From: Perna viridis
Taxonomy: Eukaryota
Assembly (NCBI GenBank): GCA_037379345.1
Contig: CM074515.1
Location: 10,602,001-10,666,000 of the forward strand
DNA length: 64,000 nt
Reading direction: 5' to 3'
Part shown: piece after piece, positions 1 through 6,522 of the stretch
Position numbering within the stretch: position 1 is the stretch's first letter
Layout: each line of letters starts with the position of its first letter
Notes under the pieces: generated by a model
What the model saw: only the letters and a program-made list of their open reading frames with translations
Databases searched by the model: none
Told to the model about the DNA's origin: nothing
Position numbers and translations under genes: made by a program

Positions 1-653
1 CATTTTTCAACATCACAAACGTCAACATTGACGTTAATACAATCTAACATTTTATCAATTGCTTCATAATCAGTTTGTACACAAGAAAATAGCCTTTTAT
101 AAAAACTATAAATAACATCTAAAATTTCAGCAGTTTCACTGACAACATTACCATCACAATTTTTTAAACCATTTATCATATTTCTATTCTGTCTATGTTT
201 CTCTAAATTCAAAAAATAGGCTGTATTTTTATCACTTTCTAATGAATATTGACATTTGGATCTTATAACAGCACCATTACAGCTATGTTTTTCTAAACCT
301 TCAAGTTCCTCTTTCAACTCTAAATATTTGACATGATCTATATCATTACCACAAGCAGCCTTTATTGACAATTCTTGTAACTTATTCTGTATTCTATAAT
401 AATCTCTATATAACTCTCTCTGTTTTTCTTTACCATAGAGTTGACTTGTTTTCTTGATTTTATATTTCAAATTATCCCACCAAATTAATGGATGTGAAAA
501 ATAAAAATCTGAACCAATTTCATCAAGTAAGATATTTCTAATTTTTTCAACAAAAAAATCATCACTCAATAAGGACTTGTTAAAAATCCAAACACCAGGT
601 CCTTTTTCAACTTCAGAAAAATCTAATTTCATACTAACAATAGAATGATCACT
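1..653 (-). mobile_element. Tx1/L1-clade non-LTR retrotransposon, 5'-truncated ORF2 (end of APE endonuclease plus linker), running off the window
   Basis: Manual translation of 653->3 is open with no stop: SDHSIVSMKLDFSEVEKGPGVWIFNKSLL...WWDNLKYKIK...GAVIRSKCQYSLESDKNTAYFLNLEK...FYKRLFS. SDH, GPGxWxFN, WDxxK and GAxIRSx...ExxTxYFxxLEK are typical of L1/Tx1 ORF2. It joins directly to tRNA-array spacer at about 653. Confidence 0.92.
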
Positions 654-892
654 GCAATTTGTCGATTATAATACTTTTCTATTTCACCCTTATCGCCCGT
701 CCACTGGATTCATTCTAAGGTGTGTTAAGAAAATAATCAACTTTGGATTTTGTTCATGGTCGGACTCTGTAAAATCTTGAACTTACCAAGATGTTACGAA
801 TTAAGAAGCGCACGATCGACAACTTAGAAGTCAACGCTATATAAACGGACGAACTATGGAAAAGAAATGTGCAGCGCTCATCTCATGCCGTC

Positions 893-897
893 AAAAA
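893..897 (-). terminator. RNA Pol III T5 terminator of tRNA-Ile (equivalent at 1350-1354)
   Basis: TTATTTTT immediately 3' of the tRNA on the minus strand. Confidence 0.75.
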
Positions 898-900
898 TAA

Positions 901-974
901 TGGCCAGTGTGGGGATCGAACCCACGACATTCGCGTTATTAGCACGACGCTCTAACCAACTGAGCTAACCGGCC
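901..974 (-). tRNA. trnI-AAU: tRNA-Ile(AAT), intact, 74 nt
   Basis: Reverse complement GGCCGGTTAGCTCAGTTGGTTAGAGCGTCGTGCTAATAACGCGAATGTCGTGGGTTCGATCCCCACACTGGCCA folds as a cloverleaf: acceptor GGCCGGT/ACTGGCC, D stem GCTC/GAGC, anticodon stem TCGTG/CGCGA with loop CT-AAT-AA, T arm GTGGG-TTCGATC-CCCAC. A and B boxes are canonical. Confidence 0.97.
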
Positions 975-1357
975 CTTGACTTAAAGTAATGAAAATATTG
1001 GTTCTTATTACTCGGGTGTCTTTTATCCGTTAGTAACGTCAAAAAATTGCACAGCCGAATAGCTACTCACTTATTCTACAACAGTTTCTTTGAATTATAT
1101 CAGAGCTTATGCAATTTGTCGATTATAATACTTTTCTATTTCACCCTTATCGCCCGTCCACTGGATTCATTCTAAGGTGTGTTAAGAAAATAATCAACTT
1201 TGGATTTTGTTCATGGTCGGACTCTGTAAAATCTTGAACTTACCAAGATGTTACGAATTAAGAAGCGCACGATCGACAACTTAGAAGTCAACGCTATATA
1301 AACGGACGAACTATGGAAAAGAAATGTGCAGCGCTCATCTCATGCCGTCAAAAATAA

Positions 1358-1410
1358 TGGCCAGTGTGGGGATCGAACCCACGACATTCGCGTTATTAGC
1401 ACGACGCTCT
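1358..1410 (-). pseudogene. 3' part (nt 22-74) of a tRNA-Ile(AAT) gene split by the Tx1 insertion
   Basis: Identical to 901-953, then breaks into the retrotransposon 3' end at 1411. Confidence 0.93.
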
Positions 1411-2869
1411 TTTGTTATCTTGATAAAATTTTATTCACAGTAAAACATCGTATAAAAGAATTATTGGGCTAGTCTCCCAATAATTCACATATCACAGATC
1501 ACAAATTTTCCTTAAATTACATTGACAGTATATATTTGAATAAGTATATTTAAAAGTCTATCACAACATTATCATCAGAGATGCGCAGAACAGGATTGTC
1601 ATTCAAGTAATATTTCTGAAACAAAGAAAAGTTCTTTTTCTGTATATAATACATGTAAGCATAATTAACATGCTTTTGAAGAACAGATTTAAAATAAGAA
1701 ATAATGTGCAAAACTTTCTCATCTTTCATGACTAAATTTCTTCTCTTTACAACACAAAACCTTCTAACAGATAAAGCAGTATTAACAAAATAAAAGTTAA
1801 CTTTTTTATCTTTCTTGAGTAGATCGAAATAACATAGAAAATTAAAGTCTAACATATTGATAAAGCTAGCTGAACTATTACACAATATATTATGTAAAAA
1901 GTCTTTAAAAAAGTCATTGAATCGAGTCAAACATCTACACGAAATTATAAGATGTTCTAAGTCCTCATGCATATCATCACAAACTGGACACAATGAATCA
2001 TCAGTAATGCGACATCTCAATAACCTCAATAGCTACTCACTTATTCTACAACAGTTTCTTTGAATTATATCAGAGCTTATGCAATTTGTCGATTATAATA
2101 CTTTTTCTTTAGAAACTGGACACAATGAATCATCAGTAATGCGACATCTCAATAACCTCTCCTTGGTAAATAAAACTCTATGAAATATTTTAAATGATAA
2201 CTCAATCCAATCACTTGGTAAAAATGGCAAGTTCAAAATTGTTTGGGCTTTTTGAGTATTAAATCAGAAAACATCTCACACCAATATTTGACAGCATTCG
2301 GTTCTTTTGATAATGATTTCAACAACATAGAATAAAAAAACTTTGTTGTACTAGGAAAAGAGTATTTTCTATTACTAACATTACATTCTATATTCAAACT
2401 GAGATTTCTACGAACATTTTCATTATTTTCTACTAAAATTTTACATTCATCAGGAATACATTGTTTTATACATTGTACTACCTTAATACTCTTAGCAGCA
2501 GATACCTGTGGAAACTTTTCAGAAACAATATCTTGAACAAACTCATCTCTCATAAATCCCTTTTTACATTCAAATGCTAAATCTTTCACTTTAATAATGC
2601 CTGCATCTATAAAAGTCTTGATATACAGCATATTACCATTATTAGTAATCAAAGGATTATTGAACAAAGGCAGGTCAAATACATTATTCAAATTGATATC
2701 AATTTCAATATAATCACGTATCTTTCCCCAAGCAAACAGCATACATTTATAAAAATCAGGTAAACTCTCCAACTGTCTCTGCTTAAATTCACAGAACAAA
2801 ATCTCAATACCAAGTTTCATTTCTTGTACTTTGGAAAAGAAATAAGTACAAAGATGCTTCCAAATCCAC
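1411..2869 (-). mobile_element. 5'-truncated Tx1/L1-clade retrotransposon inserted in tRNA-Ile with a 14-bp TSD
   Basis: TAGCACGACGCTCT occurs at 1397-1410 and 2870-2883. ORF2 C-terminal pieces: 2233-2820 (LPDFYKCMLFAW...PLFNNPLI), 2113-2212 (ELSFKIFHRVLFTKERL) and 1550-2027 (CPVCDDMHEDLEHLIISC, a CCHC zinc knuckle). Stop at 1550, 3' UTR of about 140 nt, AATAAA at 1435-1430, short A-rich end. Confidence 0.93.
1550..2869 (-). pseudogene. Disrupted ORF2 C-terminal region (post-RT region and zinc knuckle) of the Tx1-like element
   Basis: Track ORFs 2233..2820 and 1550..2029. Frameshift near 2230-2260 and interruption at 2028-2112. Confidence 0.85.
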
Positions 2870-2904
2870 TAGCACGACGCTCTAACCAACTGAGCTAACC
2901 GGCC
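2870..2904 (-). pseudogene. 5' part (nt 1-35, including A box) of the split tRNA-Ile(AAT)
   Basis: TAGCACGACGCTCTAACCAACTGAGCTAACCGGCC is identical to 940-974 and is followed by the array's upstream flank. Confidence 0.93.
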
Positions 2905-5811
2905 CTTGACTTAAAGTGATGAAAATATTGGTTTTTGTTTAAATTTTTCATATTCAGCATGCGGTCGATAAAGATTCTGAATCAATGTTCAACTTGTATG
3001 TGCGTCCTAACAATATTAATAACTTTTCCTGAAAAGTAAAACGTAGCATCTCATAAGGCGATGCGGCTTTGACTTACAATGAACCGTTGGTATTTGTCTC
3101 GGACTATTTTGCATTTAAATGGACTACTTTCTAGTATGTTCAGGGACTTTCCCTTTTTAATGTACTCAGTATATGATAATATATCCTTTAACTACTTTTT
3201 CACAAAAATTGAAGAGGTTGAATTATTCGAGTTAAAGTAATGATCATTTGGCGAATGTTATGGTGTCTATTTCTTGTCTCTTTCTCAATTAGTATACCGA
3301 ACAATTAATTCTGTAAAAAAGGGGGAAAAACAAACATTATCTTTACCAGAATGGTAAAGATTTTTAATATTGACGTGCCTTGGAATGATCAGTAAGTATT
3401 CTGGTATTGAAAATGTATTCTTGCAAGAATAAAAAACAAGTATTTTTAAATTCAATATTAACTCCAGAAAACCGTTAATTGTAAAGATTTTTATTCAGAT
3501 GATGGTGGTATTGATAGGTCAATTAAAGTCTGTTTGATGTGCATTGAACATATTCATTGGAGACGTGAACTGTATTTGTTCGTTTATTTTCGGTTCGATA
3601 TTACAACAATGTATCAGATCCAAATCTTTTTTGATTTTGCTTCATTTTCAGCATGTAGGTTCCAAGTTCCCATTACAATTAATAAACTATAATTAACTAT
3701 TCTTGAATGGTTAGACCACTGATTTTTATATTAGACAACTGGGTTAGACACTTTCGAGATATTCACTATTTGAAACGAATTCGCTATGATGTGTAATTTG
3801 ACATAGCTATCTACTCGGCAAAAGTTACTTGGATAATGATTTATGCATCGAACTAAATTGACGTGATAATTTAGTATCAGAAAATTACTGAGCTCATTTG
3901 CGTAAGTTTTTTTTTTATAGTATGGCATTTTTTTCTAATTGGTCATTTTAATTACTTTAATATTCTTGAAGCTTTGAAACAAACAGATGCTAAGCTTATG
4001 AAATTGTTTTCCAGATTCCTTCTACATGTTATTAGAGATCGAGGAAATACTGCTCTAGTTCATCTATGGACATAGCATCATCAAGTACATGTAGAATTTT
4101 TGTAGAATAAGGGACATGAACTGGTTGTAGTATTCAAGTGTGCAAAATCTTGTGCAAATACAACGTACTCAACAGGGTCCAGTTAGAGTCCCGGATGTAC
4201 ATGACAGGGATACATATGTGGTGAAGCGGATGAGTGATTAGATTCAGCTAAACTTTTTTCGGGGGTGGTTTGAATGATCACCGAAGTCCTGATTTTACAA
4301 TTAAGTGATTGATAAGCCTGCAATGTGTGTAACGGAATAAATAATCCTAGGTGACTCCCATCCAGTGGGCGAAAAATTCCATCGCGTCTTCTTTGCCTTC
4401 CTGCCAATACTTGAGGTGTTCTGGATTACACTCTCAGCGTTAGATACACCATACCTGTTCACCAGGAATGGATACAGTGGCCGAATAGAACATCAAGAGA
4501 TGAATAGATAGCAATGATAACCGACACAGGTTTGAGCTAAGTATCATCGCTTAATAACATTTGCATTTTCATTAAAGGCATACAAAATGCAGAAACTTTC
4601 ATGGCGGTTGAATCATCACACAGTCCACTTTTGTAGGTAGTAGAGTTATCGTTCTTTCTACTGTAATTCAAGTATATATTAATGTCGTACATATGTACTC
4701 AATTGAGAACATTTTTGTCAGTTTTCAGTTTAAAAAATGGAAAATCCATTCTGAAAACATAGATCTTTGGTTGTTTTGTACGAAAGCCCAAGGAGCTTAT
4801 TTTCGTAAACTAAAACTAAAACTGAAAATAAATATAATCAATGAAACGTTTGTCTTGTTTGTAGATGTAAAAGAAGAAACGTATAATTAGTCCGCCCTGT
4901 ATTTTTCCAATGCAACTTTCTATTTTATTATTTTTTTTTTTCGTTTTTTTTTTGTTTAAGGTCAAATGGGGAGATTTAAAACTGCTTTCTTCTTAATATT
5001 AAGTAGTACTTATGTTTTGTTTGGTCAAACGAAGTCATTTTTGAAACTTTTTATATCAAGAATGAACATGGGACGAAAAAAAATCAAACGAAACAAAGCA
5101 AAAACAAAAAAACAAATCCAAACAAAAAAACAGAATGTAGGAGTAAAAAGTCATGACCCTAAAATGCAAACGACAACAGAAAAGTATTTCATGACAGGAA
5201 TGTTTCAAGATCAGATAGCTAAACCAACCTAATCGTCAACGTTTGTAGGATCGCAGGAGCTATGAAAACAAAATTGTGTCAAATTTTGTGACGTTATAAC
5301 TTATTTTTGGTTTTTTTTTTATAGTTCTGTTTTTGTTTTTCATTCTTTACGTTTTTGTGTGTACTTTTTTACACTCATATTTTAGGAGTTTTTACCATAA
5401 AGTTTCTTAAAAATCGATTAGGTCAGTTACAATGTTTAATTTACATCCCCTTAAAAATTACATTTTTCAAATGGTCAAACAACCAAAATGTGTACTGGAT
5501 TCTGGGTGGGGTGGGGGAGGGGGAAACCATGATGAATTTAATTGCGTTTTCACAAATTTTCCTCTTCTGTGTCCGCCTTTGGGTACAACTTTTATAGATA
5601 CAATGTATATTTTATTGTTGGTGCTTATGATTTTCTTTACCAGGCAACATGTACATGTACATGTACAACCATATAAAGTACAGTGTAGTTTGTCTTATAT
5701 AAGTTTGACGGATCGAAATTATAATTTTTTTCTAGTTTGTATAGTTAATCATAGATCAATAGAAGTCTGTGTAATAGTCTAACAAGTAGTATTTGACGTG
5801 AATTTATTACA

Positions 5812-6005
5812 ATATTTTAGCATCCTATTAAAGAAAACATTGTTTTTATAGAGATAAGAACTGTACAAGTATTTATTTATTTATTTACTTATTTATTGTA
5901 TTTGATATTTTATTTTAGCATCCTATTAAAAAACATTGTTTTTATAGAGATAAGAACTGTACACGTATTTATTTATTTATTTATTGTATTTGATATTTTA
6001 TATTT
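5812..6005. repeat. Tandem duplication, about 97-bp unit x2, containing (ATTT)n
   Basis: TATTTTAGCATCCTATTAAA...GAGATAAGAACTGTACA...TTGATATTTT is present twice. Confidence 0.85.
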
Positions 6006-6522
6006 TGAACAGCGTTATCTATTAGTCAGGCTGATTTAAACTAACCCTATCTGTGGTATTCACGGAAAATATATTGTATGCTGATCAGGAGAATTAATTG
6101 GTATAGTGGATCAAAGCAAGGATCAAAGAATTTTTACCAGTGACCAATGATTCATAGCAACAAATGTCAATTTAGAATTATTAATGAAATTCGAGAATAA
6201 TTGTCGTGGCGTGACATCTATCAAACTTGTAGGAAATTCAAATAATTGGTGACAACTGCTTATTTTATTGTCTCATTAATACACTTTCATCTTCATTGCA
6301 GACTAACAATATATGCTTTAGGGATAAAGTTATCAATATCCAATAGTATAAATTCCTTGGAAGAATATTTCAGAGAAAAGCTAAGCTCCCCGTGTGAGAC
6401 TTGTAAGGGTAAAAACCATCACCGTGAAACTTGCAAGGGTAGTCAATGACAATAAACACAACCCATGTGAAACTAACCTGGAAGCCCGGGTAATGTTTTC
6501 GTTCAAAGGTTTCTCTCAAATA

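What the first reader, a model, noticed from the sequence alone, without database searches (positions are those of the whole stretch)
1358..2904. Tx1-like retrotransposon inserted inside a tRNA-Ile(AAT) gene with a perfect 14-bp TSD: candidate tRNA-Ile-specific element
Seen: the tRNA is split into nt 1-35 (2904-2870) and nt 22-74 (1410-1358). Nt 22-35 (AGAGCGTCGTGCTA, from the D-stem 3' strand to the first anticodon base) are duplicated around a co-oriented, 5'-truncated ORF2 fragment that has a CCHC knuckle, AATAAA and a short A-rich end. A second Tx1-like copy (1-653) lies in the same array and orientation. Known: several Tx1-clade APE elements are sequence-specific for multicopy RNA genes or their spacers (Keno in U2 snRNA, Mutsu in 5S rRNA, Dewa in tRNA tandem arrays). 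Inference: this family nicks tRNA-Ile between nt 21 and 22 and uses the redundant array as a safe harbour. tRNA-targeting Tx1 families have precedent, so novelty depends on the family and the exact site.
Basis: partly seen in the sequence, partly recalled or inferred. Interest (0 to 1): 0.85.

Follow-up and report, generated by a model that had tools for sequence, protein, structure and literature searches.

The report
LINE inserting inside any tRNA gene
The split tRNA-Ile gene is real, but the jumping gene inside it is not Ile-specific: it belongs to a young mussel-type LINE family that lands at one fixed spot inside almost any tRNA gene and inside 5S rRNA genes, a way of choosing targets I found described nowhere in the papers I could search.

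Summary
A tRNA-Ile(AAT) gene is split at 1358-1410 and 2870-2904 by a co-oriented, 5'-truncated LINE copy (1411-2869) with a perfect 14-bp target-site duplication. A second copy of the same family occupies 1-652.

The family is 5.9 kb long and has about 230-290 copies, 0.75% divergent among the sampled best matches. All 31 sampled 3' flanks are the 3' part of an RNA polymerase III gene, in sense orientation. Genome-wide I read about 27 different tRNA anticodon classes, 5S rRNA (nt 27/28) and an A-box/B-box tRNA-like gene. None of 242 neighbouring U6 genes showed an insertion in the stretch searched.

The nick wanders over nt 20-24 and follows the 5' (A-box/start-site) side of the gene. Duplications are 12-15 bp, or 41-133 bp. 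Relatives with 43-73% protein identity in Mytilus coruscus, M. edulis and three other assemblies also sit in tRNA genes in sense orientation, four of five at this site.

Most likely the element is guided by the TFIIIC/TFIIIB/Pol III complex rather than by DNA sequence. Known Pol III-targeting retrotransposons insert beside genes, not inside them. Earlier notes of this scan reached the same reading on other DNA of this genome.

The parts
1..652 (-). Copy 1 of the LINE family. It is 5'-truncated and corresponds to reference positions 2586-3239 (ORF2 residues about 245-459, the linker after the endonuclease). It runs off the window start.
   Evidence: BLAST to the full-length copy L031 gives 99.5% identity. 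The frame is open and 69% identical to P0001 residues 245-459.
653..1109 (-). One complete 457-bp unit of the tRNA-Ile(AAT) tandem array. The 5' junction of copy 1 lies at 652/653, in the spacer 248 nt downstream of the tRNA.
   Evidence: Direct repeat D1, 653-952 = 1110-1409 at 100%. The array has a 457-bp period and 60 intact genes at C5:10543004-10602964.
901..974 (-). Intact tRNA-Ile(AAT) gene, the last intact unit of the array.
   Evidence: ARAGORN. Rfam RF00005, 66.6 bits.
1358..1410 (-). 3' part of the split tRNA-Ile gene (nt 22-74). It abuts the A-rich 3' end of the element.
   Evidence: row L001.
1397..1410 (-). Target-site duplication, 3'-side copy (AGAGCGTCGTGCTA on the minus strand).
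   Evidence: (family D3).
1411..2027 (-). Copy 2, 3' segment: reference positions 5283-5899. It holds the end of ORF2 with the CCHC motif, the 3' UTR with AATAAA, and the tail ...CAAGATAACAAA.
   Evidence: 99.0% identical to L031. Pfam zf-RVT, and 58% identical to P0001 residues 1143-1300.
2028..2112 (-). Foreign piece inside copy 2. 78 bp are identical to array spacer 1058-1135, and 7 further bases follow. It is flanked by a duplicated 47-bp element segment (reference 5283-5329).
   Evidence: Repeat families D2 and D5. BLAST overlap. Junction letters.
2113..2869 (-). Copy 2, 5' segment: reference positions 4577-5329 (ORF2 C-terminal region). The 5'-truncation point is at 2864, followed by 5 filler bases (GTGGA) next to the tRNA.
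   Evidence: 97.2% identical to L031. Junction letters.
2870..2904 (-). 5' part of the split tRNA-Ile gene (nt 1-35). The 5'-side copy of the target-site duplication is at 2870-2883.

Best explanation
The window shows two 5'-truncated copies of a young, probably still active, 5.9-kb L1/Tx1-type LINE at the distal end of the genome's single tRNA-Ile(AAT) array. ORF1 carries a CCHC knuckle. ORF2 carries an AP-endonuclease, a reverse transcriptase and a CCHC zinc motif.

The family is a generalist for genes that RNA polymerase III transcribes from internal promoters. Its endonuclease nicks the template strand just 3' of the A box. In tRNA genes of any kind this is linear nt 20-24, most often 22/23. 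In 5S rRNA genes it is nt 27/28. The element is then copied in by target-primed reverse transcription, always in the gene's orientation. The second strand is usually cut 12-15 bp further on, in the anticodon loop. That produces the 14-bp duplication seen here. Sometimes the second cut is 41-133 bp further on.

These points are shown: the site, the orientation, the breadth of targets, the youth of the family and its conservation in other mussels.

This part is inferred. The site is set by distance from the 5' promoter or start-site side of a TFIIIC-dependent Pol III transcription complex, through contact of an element protein with TFIIIC, TFIIIB or Pol III. It is not read from the DNA sequence. 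A tRNA nick at nt 20-24 plus a 5' leader of a few bases, which I did not measure, falls close to +27 in 5S.

Insertion destroys the hit gene. Large tandem arrays buffer the loss, and unequal crossing-over co-amplifies element-plus-gene units.
For: Breadth of targets: all 31 sampled 3' flanks are sense-strand 3' parts of tRNA genes, a tRNA-like gene or 5S rRNA. The 3'-terminal 25-mer occurs 275 times against 3 for the control. 121 element ends are followed 20-50 nt later by GTTCRA, against 0 for the control. About 27 anticodon classes for 15 amino acids can be read in those rows.

5S rRNA: 7 element ends in three genomic regions, 6 at nt 27/28 and one a base further on.

Position rather than sequence:
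- The same tRNA species is nicked at points 2-4 nt apart (Lys-CTT, Phe, Tyr, Leu-AAG, Ile-TAT).
- The first unambiguous flank base is linear nt 20-24 in ten reconstructed sites.
- The point stays on the 5' side in tRNAs with introns or long variable arms (Tyr, Ile-TAT, Leu, Ser).
- 5S shares no evident motif at the nick.

Dependence on an internal-promoter gene:
- In the 690-bp U6 array unit, at least 8 insertions hit the A-box/B-box tRNA-like gene at TAGCTGAGGGGAA|AGATG.
- The search found no insertion in the stretch of up to 60 bp before nt 60 of the 242 U6 genes about 250 bp away.
- No element end abuts the 5' end of another copy through a leftover tRNA 5' half, although about 14% of Ile units are occupied.

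TPRT hallmarks: poly(A) tails of variable length, variable 5' truncation, and 1-8 extra G at full-length 5' ends. Duplications are 12-15 bp, or 41, 49, about 57, about 62, about 80, about 100 and 133 bp.

Own transcription: 32 runs of five or more T in the sense strand exclude Pol III co-transcription.

Youth: 0.75% mean divergence, and 22 of 26 copies keep the last 656 ORF2 codons open. Trace sense-strand RNA reads were seen.

Conservation: relatives in M. coruscus (tRNA-Phe nt 21, four junctions), M. edulis (tRNA-His) and three other assemblies (Lys-CTT, Gly-GCC, Asn-GTT, Leu-CAG).

Analogy: TRE5-A, Ty1 and Tj1, which are tethered to Pol III factors, likewise hit both tRNA and 5S genes (PMC5911963).
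Against: No protein contact with TFIIIC, TFIIIB or Pol III was tested or could be tested here. Start sites of the tRNA genes are unknown, so the +27 ruler rests on a typical leader length that I did not measure.

5S has a weak A-box-like GCTGA 5 nt before the nick, so direct reading of a degenerate motif is not excluded. One event (L011/L012) lies in the anticodon loop of Leu-AAG at a sequence that mimics the D-arm site (TTTA|AGGCACC against TCTA|AGGCGCT). This hints at some local sequence preference. His genes are nicked further upstream, at nt 14/15 here and 9/10 in M. edulis.

Many copies are tandem co-amplifications, so there are fewer independent events than copies. The U6 and nested-insertion tests used exact patterns and rough expectations. 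Anticodons were read by eye.
Confidence: 0.6

Rival explanations
1. Direct but degenerate DNA reading. The endonuclease, or another ORF2 or ORF1 domain, recognises the conserved A-box/D-arm DNA of tRNA genes (TRGCNNAGTGG followed by an A-rich end of the D loop) and cuts a few bases downstream. 5S and the tRNA-like gene are hit because they carry A-box-like stretches.
For: All tRNA targets share the A box directly 5' of the nick. The tRNA-like gene has TAGCTGAGGGG before the nick. 5S has ACGCTGAAAGCA before the nick. The anticodon-loop event in Leu-AAG mimics the D-arm sequence. Endonucleases of Tx1L and R1 are known to carry sequence specificity (cited in PMC8869645).
Against: The 5S stretch matches only about 5 of 8 specified A-box positions, and the spacing differs. 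The nick moves 2-6 nt within one tRNA species. Leftover 5' halves, which keep the A box and the nick site, were never re-hit (0, with about 14% occupancy). No SINE head or scattered A-box-like site appeared among more than 150 flanks read.
Confidence: 0.3
2. One reading: a tRNA-Ile-specific family that recognises the sequence AGAGCGTCGTGCTAAT.
For: The window copy and at least 9 other copies sit at this sequence in the Ile array.
Against: Copies 98-99% identical to the window copy sit in about 27 other tRNA classes and in 5S.
Confidence: 0.01
3. There is no insertion preference. Insertions are random, and only those in redundant tRNA arrays survive selection and are then multiplied by array homogenisation.
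For: Element-plus-unit tandem repeats exist, with periods of 7032, about 3392 and 2212 bp and identical flanks and tails.
Against: Selection cannot produce a nucleotide-level site, a single orientation and matching target-site duplications in about 27 unrelated gene families, 5S genes and other species. Spacers of the same arrays would be equally safe, yet the 3' junctions are in the genes.
Confidence: 0.03
4. The structures are chimeric retrocopies, made by template switching between LINE RNA and tRNA or 5S RNA, or they are assembly artefacts. They are not insertions into genes.
For: Fillers of 40-46 nt, an antisense 5S piece at some 5' junctions, and the 78-bp spacer piece in the window copy show that template switching does occur.
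Against: The flanks continue into native leaders, terminators and array spacers identical to the neighbouring intact units. The 5' and 3' halves overlap as duplications. The window stretch 2700-6500, which holds the 5' junction, is held by contigs of runs from 4 studies. Independent assemblies of other species show the same structure.
Confidence: 0.01

Closest known systems
TRE5-A and TRE3 (Dictyostelium L1-type LINEs), and Ty3, Ty1 and Tj1 (LTR elements) that are tethered to the Pol III machinery
   Same: They hit many different tRNA genes regardless of sequence, and also 5S genes. Position is measured from the transcription complex. TRE3 is oriented with the gene. The domain order ORF1, then APE-RT-zinc finger, matches the TRE elements (PMC5911963).
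   Different: All of them insert outside the gene (1-4 bp to about 1 kb upstream, or 8-150 bp downstream) and leave it intact. This family inserts inside the coding region, between the A and B boxes, and destroys the gene. It lives in a large animal genome, not a compact one. The host partner is unknown.
Sequence-specific Tx1-clade LINEs of zebrafish: Mutsu (5S rRNA), Keno (U2 snRNA), Dewa (spacer of tRNA-Leu arrays)
   Same: APE-type LINEs of the same broad group. ORF2 is 35% identical over 96% of its length to the zebrafish pol-like protein BAC82613.1. They occupy a fixed point in multicopy small-RNA gene arrays and follow a safe-harbour logic (PMC3706591).
   Different: Each of those families has one target sequence. 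Here one family, with copies 0.75% apart, uses about 27 tRNA classes plus 5S, and the nick point wanders by a few bases. Dewa sits in a spacer, not in the tRNA.
Dada DNA transposons (tRNA, U6 and U1 gene-specific)
   Same: They insert inside tRNA genes, some within the A box (TAGCTC), and rely on high gene copy number (PMC3706591).
   Different: They are DDE transposases with 6-7 bp duplications. Each family is specific for one tRNA species. The mechanism is unrelated.
R1 and R2 in rDNA
   Same: TPRT elements that inactivate units of a tandem multigene family and are turned over by unequal crossing-over.
   Different: They use a single 28S sequence as target, and R2 has a restriction-like endonuclease. 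This is stated from general knowledge and was not tested here.

Membership tests
L1/Tx1-group non-LTR retrotransposon | ORF2 with an N-terminal AP-type endonuclease, a central reverse transcriptase and a C-terminal CCHC zinc motif | tested here: met
   Pfam Exo_endo_phos, RVT_1 and zf-RVT in the L031 pieces and in the intact relative P0001. The best solved relative is human LINE-1 ORF2p, E 8.7e-81, over residues 18-884.
L1/Tx1-group non-LTR retrotransposon | ORF1 with CCHC zinc knuckle(s), the Tx1 or plant-L1 type of ORF1 | tested here: met
   zf-CCHC at residues 208-224 of the 609-aa ORF1 of the relative L063, E 1e-4, above the Pfam cut-off. The same motif is visible in L031, there interrupted by a stop. 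An RRM fold in the N-terminal part was not tested.
L1/Tx1-group non-LTR retrotransposon | TPRT footprints: poly(A) tail, variable 5' truncation, target-site duplications | tested here: met
Tx1 clade in the strict sense | RT phylogeny groups it with reference Tx1 elements rather than with L1 | not testable with these tools
   No Repbase or Dfam reference set is at hand. The only indirect evidence is 35% identity over 96% of ORF2 to the zebrafish pol-like protein BAC82613.1. I could not verify which named element that is.
Sequence-specific RNA-gene LINEs (Mutsu, Keno, Dewa type) | One family has one conserved target sequence, cut at one phosphodiester bond | tested here: not met
   About 27 tRNA classes, 5S and a tRNA-like gene are used. 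The nick varies over linear nt 20-24, and within single tRNA species.
Pol III-complex-tethered retrotransposons (TRE5-A, TRE3, Ty3 type) | Targets Pol III genes of many sequences, including 5S, at a set distance | tested here: met
   U6 (external promoter) showed no insertion in the stretch searched, among 242 copies.
Pol III-complex-tethered retrotransposons (TRE5-A, TRE3, Ty3 type) | Insertion beside the gene, which stays intact | tested here: not met
   Every junction lies inside the transcribed region, between the A and B boxes. All known members insert up- or downstream (PMC5911963 Table 1).
Pol III-complex-tethered retrotransposons (TRE5-A, TRE3, Ty3 type) | Physical contact of an element protein with TFIIIB, TFIIIC or Pol III, and loss of targeting when the promoter is mutated | tested here: inconclusive
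   Only indirect evidence exists. No leftover 5' half was re-hit, and U6 was spared next to a heavily hit A/B-box gene. No binding or mutation data are available.
   Only 2 of the 31 sampled flanks are Ile-AAT. About 9 of the 100 listed rows are.

The most novel reading that the evidence does not exclude
A clade of mussel LINEs reads the geometry of the TFIIIC-dependent Pol III pre-initiation complex. It nicks the template strand about 27 bp downstream of the start site of any such gene, whether tRNA, 5S or tRNA-like. That would be a third mode of LINE targeting: neither sequence-specific nor beside the gene, but inside Pol III genes and measured by a ruler.
Probability: 0.5. Interest if true: 0.85.

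Novelty: new variant of a known kind. Interest (0 to 1): 0.78.

Why it matters
The papers I read divide target choice by retrotransposons into two classes (PMC3706591). One reads a DNA sequence at a fixed point inside a repeated gene. The other is tethered to host proteins and lands beside a gene. This family combines the fixed internal point of the first class with the indifference to sequence of the second.

It is young and abundant. It is conserved across mussel genera and comes with diverged sister families, so the determinants of targeting can be compared and tested.

It also shows a cost-bearing strategy. Every insertion kills a tRNA or 5S gene; about 14% of the tRNA-Ile array is occupied. 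That makes tRNA arrays of bivalves behave like rDNA with R1 and R2.

A LINE that integrates at a predictable point of hundreds of redundant genes is also of practical interest as a model for safe-harbour insertion.

Tried and rejected
After that I used only pattern counts, and did not try to get more letters another way.

2. The 3' end of window copy 1 could not be reached. The stretch where it was expected (L032) turned out to be the endonuclease region of a different family, about 70% identical. Whether copy 1 ends at a tRNA nucleotide stays open. Its 5' junction in the spacer would fit a long duplication of about 301 bp, or a recombination.

3. My first Pfam call used wrong frames. I redid it.

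4. Two patterns were over the 35-place limit. I shortened them.

5. ARAGORN does not call the U6-linked tRNA-like gene. I name it tRNA-like from its A box, B box and T13 terminator only.

6. The idea that 5S is hit because AAAGCACCGG mimics the Arg-CCT site AAGGCACCGG was rejected. The nick is not at the aligned position.

7. The idea that the conserved 3' end AAGATAAAA pairs with the target primer was rejected. The primer is the complement of the sequence downstream of the nick.

8. The Patella relative (37% identity) is not next to a tRNA, so the trait was not shown beyond bivalve-type relatives.

9. RNA reads gave only 5-31 reads per run. That is too few to map a transcript start.

10. Literature searches found no description of LINEs inside tRNA genes. 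Repbase and Dfam could not be consulted.

11. No structure or complex prediction was run. Host TFIIIB and TFIIIC sequences could not be fetched.
Full report
**1. What is in the window**

ARAGORN and Rfam find one intact tRNA-Ile(AAT) at 901-974 on the minus strand. It lies in a 457-bp repeat unit (653-1109). The next unit (1110 onward) is 100% identical for 300 bp and stops exactly at tRNA nt 22, position 1410.

From 1411 to 2869 runs a minus-strand retroelement fragment. At 2870-2904 come tRNA nt 1-35 and then the upstream flank, 96% identical to that of the intact unit. The 14 bases AGAGCGTCGTGCTA (minus strand) stand on both sides.

The insert ends ...AATAAAATTTTATCAAGATAACAAA. It encodes the C-terminus of ORF2 with a CPVC...H...C motif. 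The stretch 1-652 is a second fragment of the same family, in the same orientation.

- Copy 2 contains an 85-bp foreign piece (2028-2112). 78 bp of it are identical to array spacer 1058-1135. It is bracketed by a 47-bp duplication of element sequence. This is most simply a template switch during reverse transcription.
- The 5' junction of copy 1 lies in the spacer (652/653), 248 nt behind the tRNA.

**2. The family**

A search of the window's own genome (723 Mb, 46 contigs) with the last 617 bases of copy 2 gave 292 candidates. All 39 other full-length matches among the 40 places scored were 98-99% identical to the query.

A full-length copy (L031) is 5,899 bp long. It has an ORF1 region, then Exo_endo_phos, RVT_1 and zf-RVT domains. 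That copy has stops.

The closest intact relative in public data is P0001 on locus L063, 70% identical. It shows a 609-aa ORF1 and a 1,300-aa ORF2. ORF1 has an N-terminal domain, a CCHC knuckle, a long Gly/Asp-rich stretch and a basic tail.

The best solved relative is human LINE-1 ORF2p. A zebrafish pol-like protein, BAC82613.1, is 35% identical over 96% of ORF2. Named close relatives are all from Mytilus species, so the host is probably a mytilid mussel. Run and organism names were coded.

Among 26 long copies the mean pairwise divergence over the last 2.1 kb is 0.75%. 22 of them keep the last 656 codons of ORF2 open. The sample is biased towards the best matches. RNA-seq raw reads give only 5-31 reads per run, with a direction that fits sense transcripts in a standard stranded library.

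**3. Where the copies sit**

Of the 31 copies in the first 30 loci, all 31 have a 3' flank that is the sense-strand 3' part of a Pol III gene. The targets are:
- Ile-AAT, Ile-TAT, Arg-CCT, Ser-TGA and Thr-AGT
- Glu-TTC, Glu-CTC, Gly-GCC, His and Leu-CAG
- Leu-AAG, Val-TAC, Lys-CTT, Cys, Tyr, Ala-AGC and Phe
- a tRNA-like gene
- 5S rRNA (three copies)

Genome-wide counts:
- The terminal 25-mer occurs 275 times, against 3 for the reversed control.
- A 20-mer anchor occurs 230 times, against 6 for the control.
- 121 anchors are followed 20-50 nt later by the T-loop motif GTTCRA, against 0 for the control.

The rows add Pro-TGG, Pro-AGG, Thr-TGT, Thr-CGT, Arg-TCT, Leu-TAA, Ser-GCT, Val-AAC, Gly-TCC, Gly-CCC and a TCA-anticodon tRNA. 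I read these anticodons by eye. Together this makes about 27 anticodon classes for 15 amino acids.

Seven element ends abut 5S rRNA in three genomic regions. Six are at GAAAGCA|CCGGTTC, nt 27/28, and one is a base further on. The family is therefore not Ile-specific.

**4. The site**

Reconstructed empty sites for ten paired junctions put the first unambiguous base of the 3' flank at linear nt 20 (Ile-TAT), 22 (Leu-CAG, Ala), 23 (Ser, Thr, Tyr, Glu, Ile-AAT) or 24 (Phe, twice). There are 0-2 ambiguous A before it.

Within one tRNA species, independent events differ by 2-4 nt. Examples are GGTA|GAGC and GGTAGA|GC in Lys-CTT, Phe and Tyr, and GGTC|TAAGGC and TCTAA|GGC in Leu-AAG.

The point does not move in tRNAs with introns or long variable arms, so it is set from the 5' side. 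In long D loops it falls inside the loop rather than at the loop/stem border. This fits a distance better than a structure.

There are three outliers. His is nicked at about nt 14/15. One Ile-TAT event lies at about nt 24/25. One Leu-AAG event lies in the anticodon loop, at a sequence resembling the D-arm site.

**5. The other junction**

Full-length copies begin (G)1-8 GTCGGTTTTTGGATGC. Extra G at the 5' end is what capped transcripts give. The sense strand has 32 runs of five or more T, one of them at positions 9-13. The element therefore cannot be a Pol III co-transcript.

Target-site duplications are 12-15 bp in Ser, Tyr, Ile, Ile-TAT and Thr, and by reading the flanks in Arg. They are 41 and about 62 bp (Phe), 49 and about 100 bp (5S), about 57 bp (Glu), about 80 bp (Ala) and 133 bp (Leu-CAG). 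One case is a 50-bp target deletion. Some 5' junctions carry 40-46 nt of filler or an antisense 5S piece. One copy has Lys-TTT on one side and Lys-CTT on the other.

The first nick is therefore precise to a few bases, and the second is loose. This is usual for APE-type LINEs.

**6. What is and is not a target**

The odd target of L025 proved to be a gene with an A box (TAGCTGAGGGG), a B box (GGTTCAAATCT) and a T13 terminator. It lies about 250 bp upstream of each U6 gene in a 690-bp tandem unit. U6 occurs 242 times there.

At least 8 element ends lie in the tRNA-like gene, at ...GGGGAA|AGATG, right behind its A box. None was found in U6. That was an exact pattern covering insertions up to 60 bp before U6 nt 60.

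No element end is followed within 5-35 nt by the 5' end of another copy. Leftover 5' halves keep the A box and the nick site but have lost the B box, and they are not re-used. This holds although the Ile array alone has 60 intact units and at least 9 element ends within it, with a tenth about 6 kb beyond.

With rough assumptions I would have expected several such nestings if the local sequence sufficed. The test is suggestive, not decisive.

**7. Other species and sister families**

| Locus | Relative and ORF2 identity | Source | What flanks it |
|---|---|---|---|
| L064 | P0010, up to 73% locally | Mytilus coruscus | tRNA-Phe array; four 3' gene parts start at nt 21 and five 5' parts end at nt 28-43, including two minimal insertions of 16 bp |
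| L065 | P0033, 43% | M. edulis | splits a tRNA-His with a 17-bp duplication (nt 10-26) inside a His array |
| L069 | P0005, 58% | other assembly | 3' flank Leu-CAG |
| L070 | P0007, 44% | other assembly | 3' flank Asn-GTT at A\|GCGCG |
| L071 | P0028, 43% | other assembly | 3' flank Lys-CTT at A\|GAGCATG; 5' flank Gly-GCC nt 1-35 |
| L068 | P0093, 37% | Patella | not next to a tRNA |

In this genome, families only 70-85% identical in DNA sit in the same clusters. One of them is at tRNA-Ser(CGA). The trait is therefore old within a bivalve-type clade.

**8. How it most likely works**

The data fit a protein-guided ruler. An element protein docks on the complex that TFIIIC-dependent genes share: TFIIIC, TFIIIB and Pol III, the same for tRNA and 5S genes but different for U6. 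It places the endonuclease on the template strand about 27 bp from the start site. In tRNA genes that point is just behind the A box. A mild local preference then picks the exact bond.

This is inference. Its main support is the breadth of targets, the wandering nick, the shared tRNA-plus-5S range with TRE5-A, Ty1 and Tj1 (PMC5911963), the spared U6 genes and the unused 5' halves.

The main rival is direct reading of a degenerate A-box-like motif. I cannot exclude it. 5S has GCTGA five bases before the nick, and one anticodon-loop event mimics the D-arm sequence. I put the two at about 0.6 and 0.3.

**9. Comparison with the known**

The 2018 review of Pol III-targeting retrotransposons lists only insertions upstream or downstream of genes (PMC5911963 Table 1). 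The zebrafish Tx1-clade elements each have one target: Mutsu in 5S, Keno in U2, and Dewa in the spacer of tRNA-Leu (PMC3706591).

That paper explicitly contrasts sequence-reading elements inside targets with protein-tethered elements near targets. The present family crosses this divide. Dada DNA transposons do sit inside tRNA genes, but each in one species of tRNA.

Seven literature searches found no description of such LINEs. Repbase and Dfam could not be checked, so an existing database entry is possible.

**10. Earlier notes of this scan**

Earlier notes report the same phenomenon on other pieces of this genome: s1-755822, s1-755810 and s1-766528. They also report non-autonomous protein-coding retroposons at the same site: s1-753411 and s1-771648. 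They are not independent evidence.

I reached the reading before seeing them, and I re-tested the main claims here. I did not test the non-autonomous elements.

**11. Limits and things left out**

Later evidence consists of pattern counts.

Many copies are tandem co-amplifications with identical flanks and tails, so there are dozens of independent events, not hundreds.

Noticed in passing
G000:C2:52.186-52.28 Mb; loci L025 (3' flank) and L061 (5' flank): U6 snRNA genes form a tandem array of at least 242 copies with a 690-bp period. Each unit also carries a tRNA-like gene (A box TAGCTGAGGGG, B box GGTTCAAATCT, T13 terminator) about 250 bp upstream of U6. ARAGORN does not call it. Its role is unknown.
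   Followed up: partly
window 2028-2112, flanked by 1981-2027 and 2113-2159: Inside the window's LINE copy, 78 bp of the array's own spacer plus 7 bases are bracketed by a 47-bp duplication of element sequence. This looks like a double template switch during reverse transcription. The origin of the template is unexplained.
   Followed up: partly
G000:C6:43.42-43.43 Mb, C1:28.31-28.32 Mb, C5:37.788-37.793 Mb (coordinates): Element-plus-tRNA units are themselves tandemly repeated, with periods of 7032, about 3392 and 2212 bp and identical flanks and poly(A) lengths. Unequal crossing-over therefore amplifies inserted units, as with R1/R2 in rDNA. Copy number overstates the number of insertion events.
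   Followed up: partly
L020/L021 5' junction; L042; L033/L034; L037 against L028: There are irregular 5' junctions. Some have 40-46 nt fillers, and one resembles an antisense tRNA T-arm. Two full-length copies whose 3' flank is Arg-CCT have an antisense 5S rRNA 3' part abutting the 5' end. One copy has Lys-TTT on the 5' side and Lys-CTT on the 3' side.
   Followed up: no
L032 (G000:C5:10598900-10599500), about 2.5-3 kb upstream of the window: A different LINE family, only about 70% identical in DNA, lies where the rest of window copy 1 was expected. A 3'-end variant TAATAAAATTTTATCAAGATAAAAA marks another subfamily that is common in the Ile and Pro arrays.
   Followed up: partly
3' ends of L065, L069, L070, L071 and of the family here: The last bases before the poly(A) tail (…AAAGATAAAA, …CAAGATAAAA or …CAAGAGAAAA) are kept among families whose ORF2 proteins are only 43% identical. 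This is possibly the 3' recognition element of the reverse transcriptase.
   Followed up: no
reference copy L031, element positions 9-13 (all 5' ends): Every full-length copy starts with GTCGGTTTTTGG. The T5 run a few bases after the retained tRNA 5' half would stop Pol III transcripts that start at the disrupted gene.
   Followed up: no
G000:C5:10543004-10602964: All 60 exact tRNA-Ile(AAT) genes of the genome lie in one array, on one strand. The window holds its last intact unit, so this isoacceptor depends on a single locus that the LINEs are eroding.
   Followed up: partly
L031 6260-6570 (minus strand): An older, more diverged and heavily truncated copy of about 230 bp splits another tRNA-Arg(CCT), with a 16-bp duplication GGCACCGGCCTCCTAA.
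   Followed up: no
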